This document shows positions 4,264 to 50,590 of a stretch of DNA of 64,000 nt, piece by piece. The DNA lies in contig NC_043000.1 of the NCBI RefSeq assembly GCF_006345805.1, forward strand, positions 18,724,001 to 18,788,000, in the 5' to 3' direction. Positions within the stretch are counted from its first letter, which is position 1. Each line of letters starts with the position of its first letter. The DNA is from Octopus sinensis (lineage: Eukaryota). A program made the translations under genes and the position numbers. The notes below the pieces were generated by a model. The model did no database searches. It was not told where the DNA came from and saw only the letters and a program-made list of their open reading frames with translations.

Positions 4264-4718
4264 ACACACACAGATCTATTTGAATACACACACATATGTA
4301 TGTTTAATATGCGCACAAACTTCACTAGCTCGCACGTTCCATTTATATGTAAACTAACCTGTCTTAACATTACCAATACAGCTGCGTCTTATTACTAAAT
4401 TCCCAGCCATTAGTCAGCAATAACCCGGATATATCCCCCTAGGTCGAGCTGGGTCACGCACAATGGCAGACTAACTATATAATTCCTACTGCCAGTAGAG
4501 ATTACAAATTCATGTCGGTCATACAAAGTTTGAACCGCCTGGTATCCTGACAGCACTGATCCACATTGTAACTGTTGTCGCTAAAATATCACATTCTACA
4601 AAATGATGACTAGCTGACGCTGTACCCATATGTGTGTGTACCCAAGTAAGCACATAAATGTGAAACAAGGTGGGGAAAATAGTACAAGAATACCGGATCT
4701 AGAGTAATATGCTTTGTC

Positions 4719-5244
4719 ATTGAGTGAGAGAGCAGTGCATGCCATCAAAGTGACACTGGGATAAAATATACGAAGCCCAGTATACCCATCATGACTACCC
4801 GTCTGATAAGGGTACACCAAGCACATGCATCACAACCATATGTGCGCGACATGGTGATCTCATATCAAGATAAACAGCGCATGACCTTGCAGGTGGGGCT
4901 CAGTTAGAATTTTCTTCTGGTCGAGTAACCCATCCCGCTCAAAAGGTCCCTGAATAAGGATTGTTTAAGGATGTAGAACGAATCACCCATGTTTCCAGAG
5001 GTGAATTATCCAAACCTCCAAGAATTCTTTTCACACACACGGCTATGATGTTCCCCCACTACTCCTGCCCGTGATCAGAGATGCACATATCGTCAGCCAC
5101 TAAGGGACATGCTCAACTGGTTAAGGTCAAACAACTGACAAGCAAATCTGTGGTATTGAGCAGAATATTTGCTGTAGCCCATCTTTTATACCAAGACAAA
5201 ACAATGTACATGATAACACTTCCAATCAATTAAGATGAGAAGCC
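4719..5244. mobile_element. Repeat E copy followed by (ATT)n
   Basis: Aligns by eye with 61963-62478. An older inverted piece lies at ~43280-43390. Confidence 0.75.
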
Positions 5245-5278
<34 letters not shown>

Positions 5279-5279
5279 A

Positions 5280-5315
<36 letters not shown>

Positions 5316-5346
5316 AGAAGCAAAAACATCACAGAAGCATCTCAGT

Positions 5347-5394
5347 CTAAACTGTCCGACGAACGGGAACGTGAAACTCTGAATAGCAGTTTAG
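5347..5394 (+). ncRNA. Decayed type I hammerhead-like motif
   Basis: 9-bp stem I (CUAAACUGU/GCAGUUUAG), core CCGACGA (U4C), stem II ACG-GGAA-CGU, then GAAA, and stem III with one mismatch. Confidence 0.45.
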
Positions 5395-5834
5395 TTTTTT
5401 GTGACATCTTTGTGATGTTTTTGCAGCTTTTGTAAAATTCGACACTGCTTACCAAATAATCGACATATGTGTGTGTATGTATGTATGTATGTATGTATGT
5501 ATGTATGTATGTATGTATGTATGTATGGATGGATGGATGGATGGATGGATGGATGCATGTATGTATGTACATATGTATGGATGGATGGATGGAGGAATTG
5601 ATGGATGGATGGATGGAGGGATTGATGGATGGATGGATGGATGGATGGATGGATGGACTGCTTTTTTGCAAAATCAGCGACTGTGTGCTCGCTAGAAATA
5701 TATAAATATATATATATTTAACAATTAAGGATAACTTCTTGATAAGGAATCTTAACAAGAAATTATCAGGTAGTTAGCGTGAAAAACCTCATAAGAGAAA
5801 AAATTCCAAAATAATTTTTTTCTTTTGAAAATAT

Positions 5835-5968
5835 TAATTTATATTGTATAGAGGGCATTATTACACATAAATGCCTCACGCTAAGAGGGACATAAGTCAT
5901 TTTGGTAGTAATGACTTATGTCCCTCTTAGCGTGAGGCATTTATGTGTAATAATGCCCTCTATACAAT

Positions 5969-5976
<8 letters not shown>
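5835..5976. repeat. Perfect hairpin: 67-bp arms, 8-nt loop
   Basis: 5835-5901 is the reverse complement of 5910-5976. Confidence 0.95.
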
Positions 5977-5999
<23 letters not shown>

Positions 6000-6204
6000 A
6001 AGCAAAAATGCTAGTTCTAAGATCTCTCTAAGAGACCAACGCAGTAGCTGTACTAACAATTTTCGTAGCCACTTCAACATGGCTGTCCTTTCGAACGGAC
6101 TCTACTGTGCTTTTTTAACCCCAAGAGAACATCTGCTCTAGCTGGCTAACGATGCAGAGATGCAGCCGATGAATTGCAAGCAAGGGAGCGAACCCCTACC
6201 AGTT

Positions 6205-6285
6205 TCTAGCGACGGGACCAGCAGACCAGTTCTGGTTTCGGGCTATTTCTGCCACTCTTCAGTACTGGACACCTCGTCTGCTAGA
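6205..6285 (-). ncRNA. Type I hammerhead ribozyme, intact core
   Basis: Minus strand: UCUAGC-A-GACG-AGGUGU-CCAGUA-CUGAAGA-GUGGC-AGAAAUA-GCCC-GAAA-CCAG-AA-CUGG-U-C|UGCUGG-UCC-CGUC-GCUAGA. Stems I, II and III all pair. The GUC cleavage triplet predicts a cut between 6224 and 6223. Folded by hand. Confidence 0.85.
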
Positions 6286-6396
6286 GATGGCAGTAGCTCG
6301 CTTCTGCTCGCAATTTATATATTTCAAGCGAGCACTCATTCGCTGATTTTGCAACAAGCAATCCATACATACATACATACCTACCTACCTACCTAC

Positions 6397-6442
<46 letters not shown>

Positions 6443-6792
6443 TTCGATTATTTGGTAAGCAATGTCGAATTTTACAATCTGTAAATAGTAATATTTTATA
6501 AACTTAAAGCTTAAAAAAGATCACCGTGCATTGACTAAGGCAAATAGTCTAATATTGAAGAATATAAGCTCCCGACGGTAGAAAGTAGGGGTTCTCGGAC
6601 GTGTGGGTACGGCAAACCCTTCTTTTTGAAGTCAGAATTATGTGGATATGTTCATATTTATCTTGTGCGTGTATGCATATAGGTGTGTGCGTTAGGTGTA
6701 TATCCACCTTTAGGAGTTAAATCTTCTGTTTATATAGCAGGTTGTATGTATGTGCATGCGTATATATACATACATACACACATACATATACG

Positions 6793-43546: not shown

Positions 43547-45033
43547 TGAATTTCTTTACCAATCTCTCAAAGACGTAAGAATATATAGCACAAGACAGCG
43601 AATATAATGACATTGCAAAGGATCCCAGGCGCACCCCTTTATCATATCGTTCATGTTTTATGCTACCTCTGGGAGCACTTGGGTCCCCATGATATACCGC
43701 CTGGCCCACAAAGTCTGTAAAATACAAGGAGTAGCAAACCAAAGACATCCAACAGAACAAATTGGTCAAACACAGAATTGATAAAGATTTAGGCATATGT
43801 ATTATTGAACGAAGATATGTTTTCAATGTGACGTCTGTTGAGATTTGTATAGCTTCGTTCTGTTTGATATCCATTTTTGCATCAACGGGTTCTTTTATTT
43901 GTTCGTAAGTCATTTCCTTATCTTCATGTTTTTCAGTCTCTGTTCTCTCATTGGAATCGTGTCTCTGCTCATTATTTTGAGCTGTTTTTTTTTCGGTTTC
44001 AGAACTTCCAAGAGAGTCATACGATGGAATATGATCACTTTCTTTTTCATCGCTGGTATCGCTTTCATTATCAAATTTCTCATATTTCGATTTTCCTACT
44101 TTTTTCTTTTTCTTCTGATATTTTTCAACATCGATATCTAATTCTTCCAAAGGTATTTCTTTGCTGCTGGTTACCGTTAATAAAACACATGGAATGAAAA
44201 TGCCTAAAACAACCATGAAAACGGTTCTAACGTGTCCTTCGAATGCACTTCCTAATGATTGATTATTCCAGTCTATACCACCCATGATGTATCCAACACT
44301 ACCCCCGAGTCCGGCCATAATGGTAAAAGTTGTTATACCGGTATTGTGTTCTTCCGGAATAGTAACATCGAGTAAGTATGACCGAGAAGGTGATTGACAT
44401 GCGTCGCAGTTAAAATCTAATAATATAACACCGATTATAGTTAAGATTATACCTCGGTATGCTATATGTTGTTTCGGAAATGAAGCTATAGACACAACCG
44501 TCGAATTGCTTGCATAGTTCGTATACAATAACGTTCCATTTATGTTATCTCTGTAATCACTGAGAGGCGGTTTGTCACCAGCTAATATTCCAAAGTATTC
44601 GCCGTTCGGAATTAAGACCAAACCAACGATTATGCCAGCAGACATCATAAGAATAAACGGTCGTCTTCTACCAAGACGCAATTTACATCTATCACTCATT
44701 GATCCGAAAATTGGTACCAAAAAGAAACCTAAAAGAGGACTGAGGCACCAGACCCAGGTCATGTATGTAACTGGCACACCCAGCTTCAGAAGAACGGGAC
44801 TTACAAAAGCGGTTTCGGCAGCATAGCAAAGTTCTATTCCGCAAACAGCGGCCGTAATTTGTAGCATTTCAAGTCGCGATTTCTTCTCTCGCACCTTAGT
44901 ATATCCAGGAGGTAGTTTAGATATGTTTGCAAGGTTAATACCAATGTACTGGACGTAAAGGTTCTCTTTAACATTTTTTAGTGCCTGAAGTGTTGATAAA
45001 AATAAAGCCCGTGACATAGTGAGCGATGAAAAT
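43547..45033 (-). CDS. SLC45: SLC45-family MFS transporter (proton-associated sugar transporter/MATP-like), large first coding exon; ATG at 45017
   Basis: The ORF has the SLC45 N-terminal signature (GIELCYAAETAFVSP, WCLSPLLGF, SDRCKLRLGRRRPFI, LLDFNCDACQSPSRSYLLD, LTNLFCWMSLVCYSLYFTDFVGQAVY). A polypyrimidine tract and AG (45035-45034) precede the exon. It ends at the donor TTCA|GTAAGT (phase 1). The paralog cannot be assigned without a search. Confidence 0.93.
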
Positions 45034-45684: not shown

Positions 45685-45996
45685 TAAAGCATCTAAATTT
45701 TAAAAAATTAAAAAATCTGACACCATCAAACCATTCTCTTATTTAGTAAGTTATTATTTTCGTTCCCAGGTCAGCCTTGGCTGAGCAGACTTTTAATAAA
45801 AAATGCTCCAGATGTGATCATACCAACTTTTTCCAGGTTCAGTATACCTAAACCTACATTAGATAAGTCATACAAAACTATCTTTTTATAAACATTAGGA
45901 TGTAACTTAAGGTGTTAGTTTCTATTAATTGGTGTCAATAGAAACGCTAGTGATACTAATAATATATATTGTGTGGTCATAATTTCTGATACTTGA

Positions 45997-46075
<79 letters not shown>

Positions 46076-46115
46076 ATATATATATATAATATATATTATA
46101 TATATATATATATAT

Positions 46116-47348
46116 ATTGTAATGTTTGTCGCCACTTCAGTATGGCTGTTCCGTTCGAACGAACATTACAACTCACCCAACAAGAACTCACTACTTGAAC
46201 AAAACTTGACTTAAACAGGATTCGAATAATCCTATCAGGTGGTGCTATTAAGTTAGACATGGCCTGGACCAATCTTTGGTCGAAACATATCTAAGTTTAA
46301 CTAAGTTTCTCGCCGTTGCTAAACATTTTAGATTATCTTTTTCTGTGAAAAAACTAAATCAGTTACGATATGCCATATCAACTCTTTATGGAGATTTTAA
46401 CGTCAGTGTTTAGAATTAGTTTGAATAGCTGAATTATTAAAGTAGTTGAATTTGTAACATAATACTTAAGCTTCTTACTGAGATCTGACATATTATTCAA
46501 AATGTAGTAGAAATGTTTCTAGTCAAATGTAAGCAGTTTAAATCATTTGTTGCTTATATTGAAATCAAACAGCAATTATTATTCCGAAGATTTCTTAGAC
46601 ATATTCAATAATTTCTTCTGATTTAAAATTAATGATCTTAGAGCAACATAGTAATAATTAAAATTTTTCTATAGACAGACGAAAATTTGATAATTACACA
46701 AATAAAGCAAAAATCATTTCGAAACGTTCACTCTCTCAGTGGATTGCATCAACCAAAGGAGGTAAGAAGTTGCTGCTTAACCGAATTTCAATGAACTTTA
46801 TACCACCATCTAGCTTGCAATCGATATATTGGTAAAAGTTAACTATTGGGGATTCATAAGACCACTTATAAAAATGATTAGATTTTGTGGAAATTGTTAA
46901 GGTGATAGATTTAGAAACTTAGTTTCATATACTTATTAGTTTCATATTAGTTTCATATCATATTATTTTTATTCATAGACTTCACATAAAGTAGACATAA
47001 TGTTAAGGTTGTCAAGGGATACAATGTTAATAAGATAACATGGCATGTAGCCATAACTATTATATTTAAAGACAATTAGCTCGCTTGTTTTAGCCGTCAG
47101 TGCTTTTTCAAAACAGCAAACAGTTCTGCATAACAAGGATCTGATAAAAAATATATTGCTACTTTAAATCATCGTTTAAATACATTTTTCCTGATTTTGT
47201 TTTGATTTTTTCTAACGAAATTTGTCACGTATTAAGCAAAGTGGTTAGATTTTGTACAATTCTCGAAAAATATATTCCGTGGATTCGACATCATGCAACA
47301 ATTGCTGTAGAAAAAGAAAATCATTACACATTTAAGTACAGACCGCGC

Positions 47349-47425
<77 letters not shown>

Positions 47426-47428
47426 ATA

Positions 47429-47459
<31 letters not shown>

Positions 47460-48708
47460 GATATATATATATATATTGTAATGTTTGTCGCCACTTCAGT
47501 ATGGCTGTTCCGTTCGAACGAACATTACAACTCACCCAACAAGAACTCACTACTTGAACAAAACTTGACTTAAACAGGATTCGAATAATCCTATCAGGTG
47601 GTGCTATTAAGTTAGACATGGCCTGGACCAATCTTTGGTCGAAACATATCTAAGTTTAACTAAGTTTCTCGCCGTTGCTAAACATTTTAGATTATCTTTT
47701 TCTGTGAAAAAACTAAATCAGTTACGATATGCCATATCAACTCTTTATGGAGATTTTAACGTCAGTGTTTAGAATTAGTTTGAATAGCTGAATTATTAAA
47801 GTAGTTGAATTTGTAACATAATACTTAAGCTTCTTACTGAGATCTGACATATTATTCAAAATGTAGTAGAAATGTTTCTAGTCAAATGTAAGCAGTTTAA
47901 ATCATTTGTTGCTTATATTGAAATCAAACAGCAATTATTATTCCGAAGATTTCTTAGACATATTCAATAATTTCTTCTGATTTAAAATTAATGATCTTAG
48001 AGCAACATAGTAATAATTAAAATTTTTCTATAGACAGACGAAAATTTGATAATTACACAAATAAAGCAAAAATCATTTCGAAACGTTCACTCTCTCAGTG
48101 GATTGCATCAACCAAAGGAGGTAAGAAGTTGCTGCTTAACCGAATTTCAATGAACTTTATACCACCATCTAGCTTGCAATCGATATATTGGTAAAAGTTA
48201 ACTATTGGGGATTCATAAGACCACTTATAAAAATGATTAGATTTTGTGGAAATTGTTAAGGTGATAGATTTAGAAACTTAGTTTCATATACTTATTAGTT
48301 TCATATTAGTTTCATATCATATTATTTTTATTCATAGACTTCACATAAAGTAGACATAATGTTAAGGTTGTCAAGGGATACAATGTTAATAAGATAACAT
48401 GGCATGTAGCCATAACTATTATATTTAAAGACAATTAGCTCGCTTGTTTTAGCCGTCAGTGCTTTTTCAAAACAGCAAACAGTTCTGCATAACAAAGGAT
48501 CTGATAAAAAATATATTGCTACTTTAAATCATCGTTTAAATACATTTTTCCTGATTTTGTTTTGATTTTTTCTAACGAAATTTGTCACGTATTAAGCAAA
48601 GTGGTTAGATTTTGTACAATTCTCGAAAAATATATTCCGTGGATTCGACATCATGCAACAATTGCTGTAGAAAAAGAAAATCATTACACATTTAAGTACA
48701 GACCGCGC

Positions 48709-48712
<4 letters not shown>
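46116..48712. repeat. ~1.36-kb near-perfect tandem duplication with (TA)n junctions
   Basis: Unit offset is 1359 at the start and 1360 at the end, from a 1-nt indel (ATAACAAGG vs ATAACAAAGG). Confidence 0.95.
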
Positions 48713-48777
<65 letters not shown>

Positions 48778-50394: not shown

Positions 50395-50590
50395 CATGAA
50401 CAAAGAGTAAACACAACAACGCGAGGACGTGGAACAAGTATAGTGTTATTGGACGCTCGGGAAAGGAAAGAAAGAAGAAGGATTTAACGTTTCGAGCGGA
50501 GCTCTTCGTCAGAAACTTAGAAAAAGGAAAGGTCCAAGGAAGGGAAGACGGAGAAAGAAAATCGCCTACGATACACACGCGGTCACAGTT
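50395..50590 (-). mobile_element. F-related repeat with a canonical-core minimal hammerhead (50516-50482)
   Basis: GUUU-CUGACGA-A-GAGC-UCC-GCUC-GAAACGUU-AAAU. Stem II is the same as in F but with a different loop. Confidence 0.55.

What the first reader, a model, noticed from the sequence alone, without database searches (positions are those of the whole stretch)
6205..6285. Complete type I hammerhead ribozyme in the sense orientation of the SLC45 transcript
Seen in sequence: the minus strand has an exact hammerhead core (CUGAAGA ... GAAA ... GUC). Stem I is 6 bp (CCAGUA/UGCUGG), extended past an internal loop by GACG/CGUC and UCUAGC/GCUAGA. Stem II has a bulged U and a 7-nt AGAAAUA loop; stem III is ACCAG/CUGGU. 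Established knowledge: natural type I hammerheads use a stem I bulge-loop II contact to cleave at low Mg2+, and they occur in Penelope-like elements, retrozymes and some amniote introns. Inference: it lies ~5.4 kb downstream of the last visible SLC45 exon, and the terminal exon is still missing, so it would sit in the pre-mRNA intron and could cut it co-transcriptionally between 6224 and 6223. I know of no description of such a ribozyme in a cephalopod gene, but cannot search to confirm novelty.
Basis: partly seen in the sequence, partly recalled or inferred. Interest (0 to 1): 0.88.

Follow-up and report, generated by a model that had tools for sequence, protein, structure and literature searches.

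The report
Transposon-borne hammerhead ribozyme in octopus intron
A complete, probably cleavage-competent hammerhead ribozyme does sit in the sense strand of an intron of the Octopus sinensis SLC45A4 gene, but it belongs to a repeated mobile element that is missing from the same intron in related octopods, so it looks like a transposon passenger and not a conserved gene regulator.

Summary
The minus strand of 6285-6205 carries a full type I hammerhead: CUGAAGA, GAAA, GUC, three helices, and cleavage between 6224 and 6223. A strict descriptor hits shuffled windows 0.0025 times per 64 kb. Rfam does not call it (HH9, 16 bits against a cut-off of 52).

The window is Octopus sinensis chromosome CM016862.1. 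The ribozyme lies in the sense strand of SLC45A4 intron 2, 5.4 kb after exon 2. The last coding exon lies about 7 kb beyond the window start.

It is not a conserved intronic element:
- Intron 2 of O. bimaculoides and of Argonauta hians lacks it. The flanks align, but the 1.9-kb block holding it is replaced.
- Two paralogous copies lie elsewhere. One is upstream of O. bimaculoides SLC45A4, with an intact core and one compensatory stem II change. One is downstream of O. sinensis SLC45A4, with a dead core.

The fullest copy folds into a rod of about 300 nt with the hammerhead at its tip, and the arms end at (AT)n. The window copy is 5'-truncated.

Best reading: a solo copy of an undescribed octopus hammerhead retroelement, like a retrozyme or Sm-alpha. 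It may nick the pre-mRNA only as a by-product. It is a new member of a known kind, of modest interest.

The parts
6205..6285 (-). Type I hammerhead ribozyme with its extended stem I. Core CUGAAGA 6262-6256, stem II with loop 6255-6240, GAAA 6239-6236, stem III 6236-6225, C17 at 6224. Predicted cleavage between 6224 and 6223.
   Evidence: Sequence read, descriptor hit, fold, shuffles.
6165..6320 (-). Hairpin of about 155 nt. Stem I continues as an imperfect helix of about 50 bp (6320-6269 against 6217-6165), with the hammerhead three-way junction at the tip.
   Evidence: Minimum-free-energy fold of 6330-5976, z = -4.1. The same arrangement appears in the other copies.
6000..6164 (-). 3' arm (A') of the element. 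It includes a near-palindrome at 6085-6100 (GTCCTTTCGAACGGAC on the + strand) and ends in ...GCATTTTTGCTT next to (AT)n. The matching 5' arm is missing here, so this copy is 5'-truncated.
   Evidence: Homology to L001 8956-9100 (81%) and to both arms of L003 87800-87500.
5976..5999 (.). (AT)12 microsatellite abutting the 3' end of the element; likely insertion target.
   Evidence: The L001 copy also starts directly after (AT)n.
4612..6483 (.). Block specific to the O. sinensis lineage that contains the element. It is replaced by 312 bp of unrelated sequence at the orthologous place in O. bimaculoides intron 2.
   Evidence: Collinear BLAST: window 6809-6484 matches L001 34944-35278, and window 4611-4256 matches L001 35591-35931. 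4612-5244 is a separate repeat.
11695..11871 (-). SLC45A4 exon 2 (aa 491-549), the last exon inside the window.
   Evidence: tblastn with O. sinensis XP_029635343.1 and O. bimaculoides XP_014768744.1.
43548..45017 (-). SLC45A4 exon 1 (aa 1-490).
   Evidence: tblastn, 100% identity to the O. sinensis protein.

Best explanation
The hammerhead is part of a solo, 5'-truncated copy of a repeated, non-coding mobile element of Octopus.

In its fuller form the element transcribes into a rod-shaped RNA of about 300-500 nt. The hammerhead sits at the tip, stem I continues into the rod, and the arms end at (AT)n microsatellites.

I infer that the ribozyme serves the element's own life cycle, by self-processing element transcripts. 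This is what is proposed for metazoan non-LTR retrozymes, Penelope-like elements and the schistosome Sm-alpha retroposon.

This copy landed in intron 2 of SLC45A4 in the O. sinensis lineage, or was lost from the O. bimaculoides lineage. In either case it is not kept across octopods.

Because its core and helices are intact and it lies in sense, it would probably cut some fraction of nascent SLC45A4 pre-mRNA between 6224 and 6223. That would be a by-product. The full-length mRNA is still made.

Shown: the motif, the gene context, the absence from the orthologous introns, and the paralogous copies.

Inferred: mobility by retrotransposition, catalytic activity, and any effect on the host transcript.
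For: Motif: complete and above chance.

Gene context:
- The window is 100% identical to O. sinensis CM016862.1.
- Exon 2 is at 11871-11695. The last coding exon is at L003 62040-62282, about 7 kb beyond the window start.

Not conserved in the orthologous intron:
- Flanks align collinearly with O. bimaculoides at 85-88%, but the 1.9-kb block holding the hammerhead is replaced by 312 unrelated bp.
- A profile of the element finds no copy in intron 2 of O. bimaculoides or anywhere in the A. hians locus.

Paralogous copies:
- L001 9097-9217 lies about 0.8 kb upstream of O. bimaculoides SLC45A4 and is 78% identical. Its core is intact (CUGAGGA...GAAA...GUC) and it passes the descriptor on its own.
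- L003 87800-87500 is 85% identical and has a dead core, UCGAAGA.
- That makes three copies in about 153 kb of Octopus DNA.

Structure kept across copies:
- 88% of pair cells form standard pairs, against 22-46% when partners are slid.
- 10.1/11.1 changes G:C to A:U.
- GACG/CGUC becomes GGUG/CGUU, still fully paired.

Element architecture:
- The L003 copy folds as a rod, -140.5 kcal/mol, z = -12.7.
- The arms end at (AT)n.
- A 51-nt hairpin module of the arm is shared with another repeat next to (AT)n at window 46119-46169 and 47478-47528. This is what one would expect of a shared 3' tail.

Literature:
- Type I hammerheads in animals mostly sit in retroelements (PMC7229834, PMC6155905).
- In Xenopus, monomeric copies are dispersed and about 44% of retrozyme sequences overlap introns (bioRxiv 10.64898/2026.07.22.740005).
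- Penelope-like elements show microsatellite insertion bias and inverted arrangements (PMC8557442).
Against: - Only three copies could be examined, because no octopus genome was searchable. Copy number, consensus, target-site duplications and the autonomous partner are therefore unknown.
- No tandem array, which defines a retrozyme, was seen.
- No RT/endonuclease ORF lies nearby.
- The orthologous comparison shows replacement of a block, not a clean empty site. Loss in O. bimaculoides cannot be formally excluded.
- Covariation support is not statistically significant with three sequences: 155 of 500 shuffles reach the observed value.
- Activity is untested, and stem II has a bulge or mismatch next to the core.
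Confidence: 0.8

Rival explanations
1. Co-opted intronic ribozyme. The hammerhead has been domesticated to regulate SLC45A4 pre-mRNA processing, like the amniote intronic HH9/HH10 ribozymes in RECK, CTCL and DTNB.
For: Sense orientation, an intact core and stable helices inside an 18.7-kb intron. An alternative short isoform X2 of the gene exists.
Against: Absent from intron 2 of O. bimaculoides and A. hians. Paralogous copies lie outside the gene. The extra exon of isoform X2 lies at L003 81399, about 32 kb downstream of the ribozyme, so it is not explained by cleavage here.
Confidence: 0.04
2. A DNA-level palindromic element that merely carries a hammerhead. This could be a MITE or foldback transposon with about 145-bp inverted arms inserting at TA, or a Penelope-style head-to-head double insertion. 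In that case the rod would reflect DNA architecture and not a functional RNA shape.
For: Long inverted arms and (AT)n at both outer ends. Penelope-like elements often carry an inverted 5'-truncated copy upstream (PMC8557442). The window locus has further inverted structure: 5430-5707 against 6313-6477, and a perfect palindrome at 5835-5976.
Against: The window copy keeps the 3' arm and the inner hairpin but lacks the 5' arm, which is the pattern of 5' truncation in retroposition. The inner 155-nt hairpin is present in all copies regardless of the outer arms. Part of the arm is shared as a terminal module with an unrelated repeat.
Confidence: 0.13
3. Chance occurrence of the hammerhead consensus in AT-rich, repeat-rich DNA.
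For: Rfam does not reach threshold. A strict descriptor would still give roughly 100 chance hits per 2.7-Gb genome, extrapolating.
Against: A copy 78% identical in another species keeps the core and all helices with a compensatory change. In about 300 kb of held cephalopod DNA the only descriptor hits are members of this family.
Confidence: 0.01

Closest known systems
Metazoan non-LTR retrozymes (Cervera & de la Pena 2020, PMC7229834; Li et al. 2026 preprint, 10.64898/2026.07.22.740005)
   Same: - Canonical type I hammerhead with real helices I-III and a loop II / stem I internal loop.
- Non-coding unit of a few hundred nt predicted to fold into a highly paired RNA.
- GC around 45%.
- Multi-copy.
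- Monomeric copies scattered through the genome, including introns.
   Different: No tandem repeat was seen at any of the three loci. The arms end in (AT)n and one copy is 5'-truncated, more like a SINE. The sequence is unrelated to published families as far as the tools could tell. circRNA production is unknown.
Sm-alpha / Sj-alpha hammerhead-bearing non-autonomous retroposons of Schistosoma (Ferbeyre 1998, cited in PMC6155905)
   Same: A short non-autonomous retroelement carrying an efficient type I hammerhead. From my memory of the Sm-alpha sequence, loop II also carries an AAAUA-type motif.
   Different: No Pol III A/B boxes were tested here. The long inverted arms are not a described feature of Sm-alpha.
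Hammerheads in the pseudo-LTRs of Penelope-like elements (PMC8557442, PMC6155905)
   Same: Association with microsatellite targets, inverted and truncated insertion architecture, and a hammerhead near the element's end.
   Different: Hammerheads in Penelope-like elements are minimal, with a helix III of 1-2 bp, lack the tertiary-contact loops and usually occur in tandem. This one has a 4-5 bp helix III and canonical loops. No RT/GIY-YIG ORF is nearby.
Amniote intronic hammerheads HH9/HH10 (RECK, CTCL, DTNB; de la Pena & Garcia-Robles 2010, cited in PMC6155905)
   Same: A type I hammerhead in the sense strand of an intron. HH9 is the best Rfam match, though weak.
   Different: Those are conserved at orthologous positions across classes. 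This one is absent from the orthologous intron of a congener.

Membership tests
Hammerhead ribozyme, type I | Conserved core C3-U4-G5-A6-N7-G8-A9, G12-A13-A14, A15.1:U16.1, and H17 at the cleavage site | tested here: met
   CUGAAGA 6262-6256, GAAA 6239-6236, and U6225/C6224.
Hammerhead ribozyme, type I | Three helices around the core, with the 5' and 3' ends in helix I | tested here: met
   Stem I is 6 bp, stem II is 4 bp plus a bulge, and stem III is 4-5 bp. All are found by the descriptor and by the minimum-free-energy fold.
Hammerhead ribozyme, type I | Loop II / stem I internal-loop tertiary contact | tested here: inconclusive
   A 7-nt loop II (AGAAAUA) and an internal loop AGGUGU/UCC six bp from the core are present, and loop II is conserved in the intact paralogue. 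The contact itself cannot be shown from sequence.
Hammerhead ribozyme, type I | Score at or above the Rfam gathering threshold (RF00163 or clan CL00010) | tested here: not met
   No gathering hit. HH9 scores 16 bits against 52. The L001 copy gives no hammerhead match at E up to 10.
Hammerhead ribozyme, type I | Site-specific self-cleavage | not testable with these tools
   Needs in vitro transcription.
Metazoan non-LTR retrozyme | Type I hammerhead inside short head-to-tail tandem repeats (about 150-450 bp) | tested here: not met
   A single unit at each of three loci, with no second copy within the loci.
Metazoan non-LTR retrozyme | Non-coding, multi-copy, low GC | tested here: met
   No ORF is conserved between copies. 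There are three copies in about 153 kb. GC is 44-46%.
Metazoan non-LTR retrozyme | [quoted passage not shown] | not testable with these tools
   No transcriptome access.
Penelope-like element (pLTR hammerhead) | Linked RT plus GIY-YIG ORF, or homology to a pLTR | tested here: inconclusive
   No long RT/EN ORF was seen by eye among the ORFs of at least 110 aa in the window, L001 or L003 (no family search was run on them). No octopus Penelope-like element sequence was available to compare termini.
Penelope-like element (pLTR hammerhead) | Minimal hammerhead with a 1-2 bp helix III, usually in tandem | tested here: not met
   Helix III is 4-5 bp, and the motif is single.
Conserved (domesticated) intronic hammerhead | Presence at the orthologous intron position in related species | tested here: not met
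   Absent from intron 2 of O. bimaculoides and A. hians.

The most novel reading that the evidence does not exclude
Octopus genomes may harbour an undescribed, abundant family of hairpin-shaped hammerhead retroelements. They would disperse as solo units and not as tandem arrays, carry a LINE- or Penelope-type stem-loop tail, and be invisible to the Rfam models. Intact sense copies in introns, such as this one in SLC45A4, would cleave host pre-mRNAs co-transcriptionally. That would give a transposon-driven, lineage-specific layer of transcript control in cephalopods.
Probability: 0.15. Interest if true: 0.55.

Novelty: new member of a known kind. Interest (0 to 1): 0.3.

Why it matters
The case shows that a well-formed ribozyme in the sense strand of an intron is not evidence of domestication by itself. 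One orthologous comparison and two paralogues were enough to reassign it to a mobile element.

The family seems undescribed, and the Rfam hammerhead models miss it, so cephalopod annotations based on Rfam probably under-count such ribozymes.

If the family proves abundant and active, it would add cephalopods to the animals with hammerhead retroelements. It would also offer natural test cases, namely intact sense copies in introns, for how co-transcriptional ribozyme cleavage affects splicing.

Tried and rejected
- Rfam at gathering score on the window: nothing. In permissive mode only a weak HH9 match appeared, and the paralogue gave nothing.
- A protein search with the antisense ORF through the hammerhead, hoping to pull ORFs called on other copies in public assemblies: no hit.
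- A protein search with a LINE ORF from the window, to harvest more octopus loci: the hits came almost entirely from other animals and gave no usable octopus DNA.
- Exact-pattern scans of JGI metagenomes (two) and IMG/VR: empty.
- O. vulgaris locus: the gene range was too long, so no DNA was returned.
- Logan contigs of another Octopus species (L004-L007) and an ENA cephalopod-like contig (L008): no copy.
- ARAGORN: no tRNA-like head in the window.
- Covariation statistics on three sequences are uninformative.
- I considered that the terminal exon might lie between 11695 and 6285, which would make the ribozyme post-genic. I rejected this because tblastn finds it only at L003 62040-62282.

Full report
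**Observation.**
On the minus strand of 6285-6205 the sequence reads UCUAGC-A-GACG-AGGUGU-CCAGUA-CUGAAGA-GUGGC-AGAAAUA-GCCC-GAAA-CCAG-AA-CUGG-UC|UGCUGG-UCC-CGUC-GCUAGA. Every core position of a hammerhead is there: C3-A9 is CUGAAGA at 6262-6256, G12-A14 plus A15.1 is GAAA at 6239-6236, U16.1 is 6225 and C17 is 6224.

The one correction concerns stem III. Its fifth pair would close a 2-nt loop, so it is effectively ACCA/UGGU closed by GAAC. The predicted cleavage site between 6224 and 6223 is right. RNAfold recovers the three-way junction.

A descriptor of my own (exact core, stem I of at least 5 bp, stems II and III of at least 4 bp) finds only this site in the window. It hits dinucleotide shuffles 0.0025 times per 64 kb, and 0 of 400 when stem I must be 6 bp.

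Rfam does not call it. There is nothing at gathering score, and the best permissive match is HH9 at 16 bits against a cut-off of 52.

**Where it is.**
The large ORF at 45017-43548 (minus) is SLC45A4 exon 1. The best database match was O. bimaculoides SLC45A4 at 97%, and the same cluster holds the O. sinensis and O. vulgaris proteins. The window is 100% identical over 55 kb to O. sinensis chromosome CM016862.1, with L003 coordinate = 55018 minus window coordinate.

Exon 2 is at 11871-11695. The last coding exon (aa 546-626) is at L003 62040-62282, about 7 kb beyond the window start. The hammerhead is therefore in the sense strand of intron 2, which spans about 18.7 kb, and lies 5.4 kb after exon 2.

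The short isoform X2 ends in an extra exon at L003 81399, far downstream, so cleavage at the ribozyme does not explain it.

**Orthologous comparison.**
I fetched the O. bimaculoides (L001) and Argonauta hians (L002) loci. Intron 2 of O. sinensis and O. bimaculoides aligns collinearly at 85-88%:
- window 9296-7834 with L001 33457-34915
- window 6809-6484 with L001 34944-35278
- window 4611-4256 with L001 35591-35931
- window 1023-3 with L001 36337-37385

Between 6484 and 4611 the window has 1,872 bp, where O. bimaculoides has 312 unrelated bp. Part of the window block (4612-5244) is a separate dispersed repeat.

A profile built from the element finds nothing in intron 2 of O. bimaculoides and nothing in the Argonauta locus. 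This is a replaced block and not a clean empty site, so strictly it shows non-conservation, with insertion in the O. sinensis lineage the simplest reading.

**Paralogues.**
The same profile and BLAST find two other copies.
- L001 9097-9217 (+) lies about 0.8 kb upstream of the O. bimaculoides SLC45A4 start codon and is 78% identical. It keeps CUGAGGA...GAAA...GUC and passes the descriptor independently.
- L003 87800-87500 (-) lies about 6 kb past the end of the O. sinensis gene model and is 85% identical. Its core is dead, with CUGAAGA changed to UCGAAGA.

That is three copies in about 153 kb of Octopus DNA. None was found in 52 kb of Argonauta or in about 27 kb of other cephalopod contigs.

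Across the three copies 88% of pair cells are standard pairs, against 22-46% when the partners are slid. Pair 10.1/11.1 changes G:C to A:U, stem I U-G becomes U-A, and GACG/CGUC becomes GGUG/CGUU, still fully paired. With three sequences this is consistent with the structure but not statistically significant (155 of 500 shuffles reach it).

**Anatomy of the element.**
In the window copy, stem I continues as an imperfect helix of about 50 bp (6320-6269 against 6217-6165), with the hammerhead at the tip of a 155-nt hairpin.

In the L003 copy a further left arm (87800-87700) pairs with a right arm (87590-87500). The whole 300 nt folds as a rod (-140.5 kcal/mol, z = -12.7).

In L001 the left arm is 145 nt long and starts directly after (AT)n. 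Its right side is lost in an assembly gap.

In the window the right arm (6164-6000) is complete and ends ...GCATTTTTGCTT next to (AT)12 at 5999-5976, but the left arm is missing. That is the pattern expected of a 5'-truncated retroposed copy.

Each arm contains a near-palindrome, GTCCGTTCGAACGGAC. A 51-nt hairpin module of the arm also occurs, next to (AT)n, at the end of an unrelated repeat at window 46119-46169 and 47478-47528. This looks like a shared 3' tail.

GC is 44-46%, against 37% for the window. No ORF is conserved between copies, and no RT/endonuclease ORF was seen by eye among the ORFs of at least 110 aa in the loci.

**Interpretation.**
The evidence fits a non-autonomous hammerhead retroelement. 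In animals, canonical type I hammerheads are mostly carried by non-LTR retrozymes, Penelope-like elements and the Sm-alpha retroposon (PMC7229834, PMC6155905).
- Retrozyme families leave dispersed monomers, and about 44% of retrozyme sequences overlap introns in Xenopus (bioRxiv 10.64898/2026.07.22.740005).
- Penelope-like elements show microsatellite target bias and inverted or truncated insertion structures (PMC8557442).
- Penelope-like elements are present in Octopus (PMC13282606).

The element here differs from a textbook retrozyme because no tandem array was seen. It differs from Penelope-like element hammerheads because helix III and the loops are canonical and not minimal. I therefore file it as working like a retrozyme or Sm-alpha-type element, without claiming membership.

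A DNA-level palindromic transposon (a MITE or foldback) is the main rival and cannot be excluded with three copies.

The domestication reading fails its defining test, which is orthologous conservation.

I judge activity likely, because the core is intact, helices I and III are stable, and the loop II / internal loop geometry is canonical. It is untested, and the bulge or mismatch at the base of stem II is a caveat. If the ribozyme is active, some pre-mRNA would be cut in intron 2. From memory of ribozyme-in-intron experiments (Fong, Ohman & Bentley 2009, not checked here), only fast cleavage aborts splicing. The annotated full-length isoform shows that the intron is normally spliced.

**Novelty.**
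I found no paper describing a hammerhead element in Octopus. The giant squid genome paper lists 235 Rfam Hammerhead_1 hits without analysis (PMC6962438). This is a new member of a known kind and not a new mechanism.

**What led nowhere.**
- The ORF-based search for more copies.
- A LINE-based attempt to harvest octopus loci.
- Metagenome and viral pattern scans.
- The O. vulgaris locus, whose range was too long.

Noticed in passing
window 50481-50512 (minus); second copy in L003 64189-64426: A second hammerhead-like motif, GUUUCUGACGAAGAGCUCCGCUCGAAACGUUAAA. It has a CUGACGA...GAAAC core, a 4-bp stem II, an ACGU mini-helix III and a weak stem I, in the style of the minimal hammerheads of Penelope-like elements. 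It lies in a 240-bp repeat flanked by microsatellites. The 34-nt motif is identical in two copies that are otherwise about 85% identical.
   Followed up: partly
window 5835-5976: A perfect palindrome (67-nt arms, 100% complementary, 8-nt spacer) directly beside the (AT)n at the end of the element. It is unique in all held sequence. It could be a very recent foldback or a long-read assembly artefact.
   Followed up: partly
window 5430-5707 and 6313-6477: An inverted duplication, 82-91% complementary, brackets the hammerhead element. Each arm carries unique sequence plus a compound microsatellite (TG/TAGG/TATG against CCAT/CATA). In the pre-mRNA the arms could form a long duplex, which might be an ADAR substrate.
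   Followed up: no
window 45996-47421 and 47354-48777: A tandem duplication of about 1.36 kb (98% identical) just upstream of SLC45A4 exon 1. Each unit carries the 51-nt hairpin tail module next to (AT)n. O. bimaculoides has its hammerhead copy at the corresponding place (L001 8956-9226, then an assembly gap).
   Followed up: partly
L003 81399 (about 26 kb beyond the window start): O. sinensis SLC45A4 isoform X2 (557 aa) skips the normal last coding exon and ends in a distant 8-codon exon (HSAYSSLN). It would lack the last two transmembrane helices.
   Followed up: no
window 12518-13114, 13197-13778 and 23725-24567 (plus): Three fragments of a LINE C-terminal ORF. PF13966 (zf-RVT) is recorded for five of the 120 listed relatives, and one source names a relative 'Reverse transcriptase zinc-b...'. 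Two of the fragments are 97% identical at the DNA level. They sit in introns 1 and 2, antisense to the gene.
   Followed up: partly
window 11872-43547 against L001 11492-31024: Intron 1 is 31.7 kb in O. sinensis but 19.5 kb in O. bimaculoides. Intron 2 is 18.7 kb in O. sinensis, 11.1 kb in O. bimaculoides and 2.4 kb in Argonauta. The difference probably comes largely from repeat insertions, which I did not measure.
   Followed up: no
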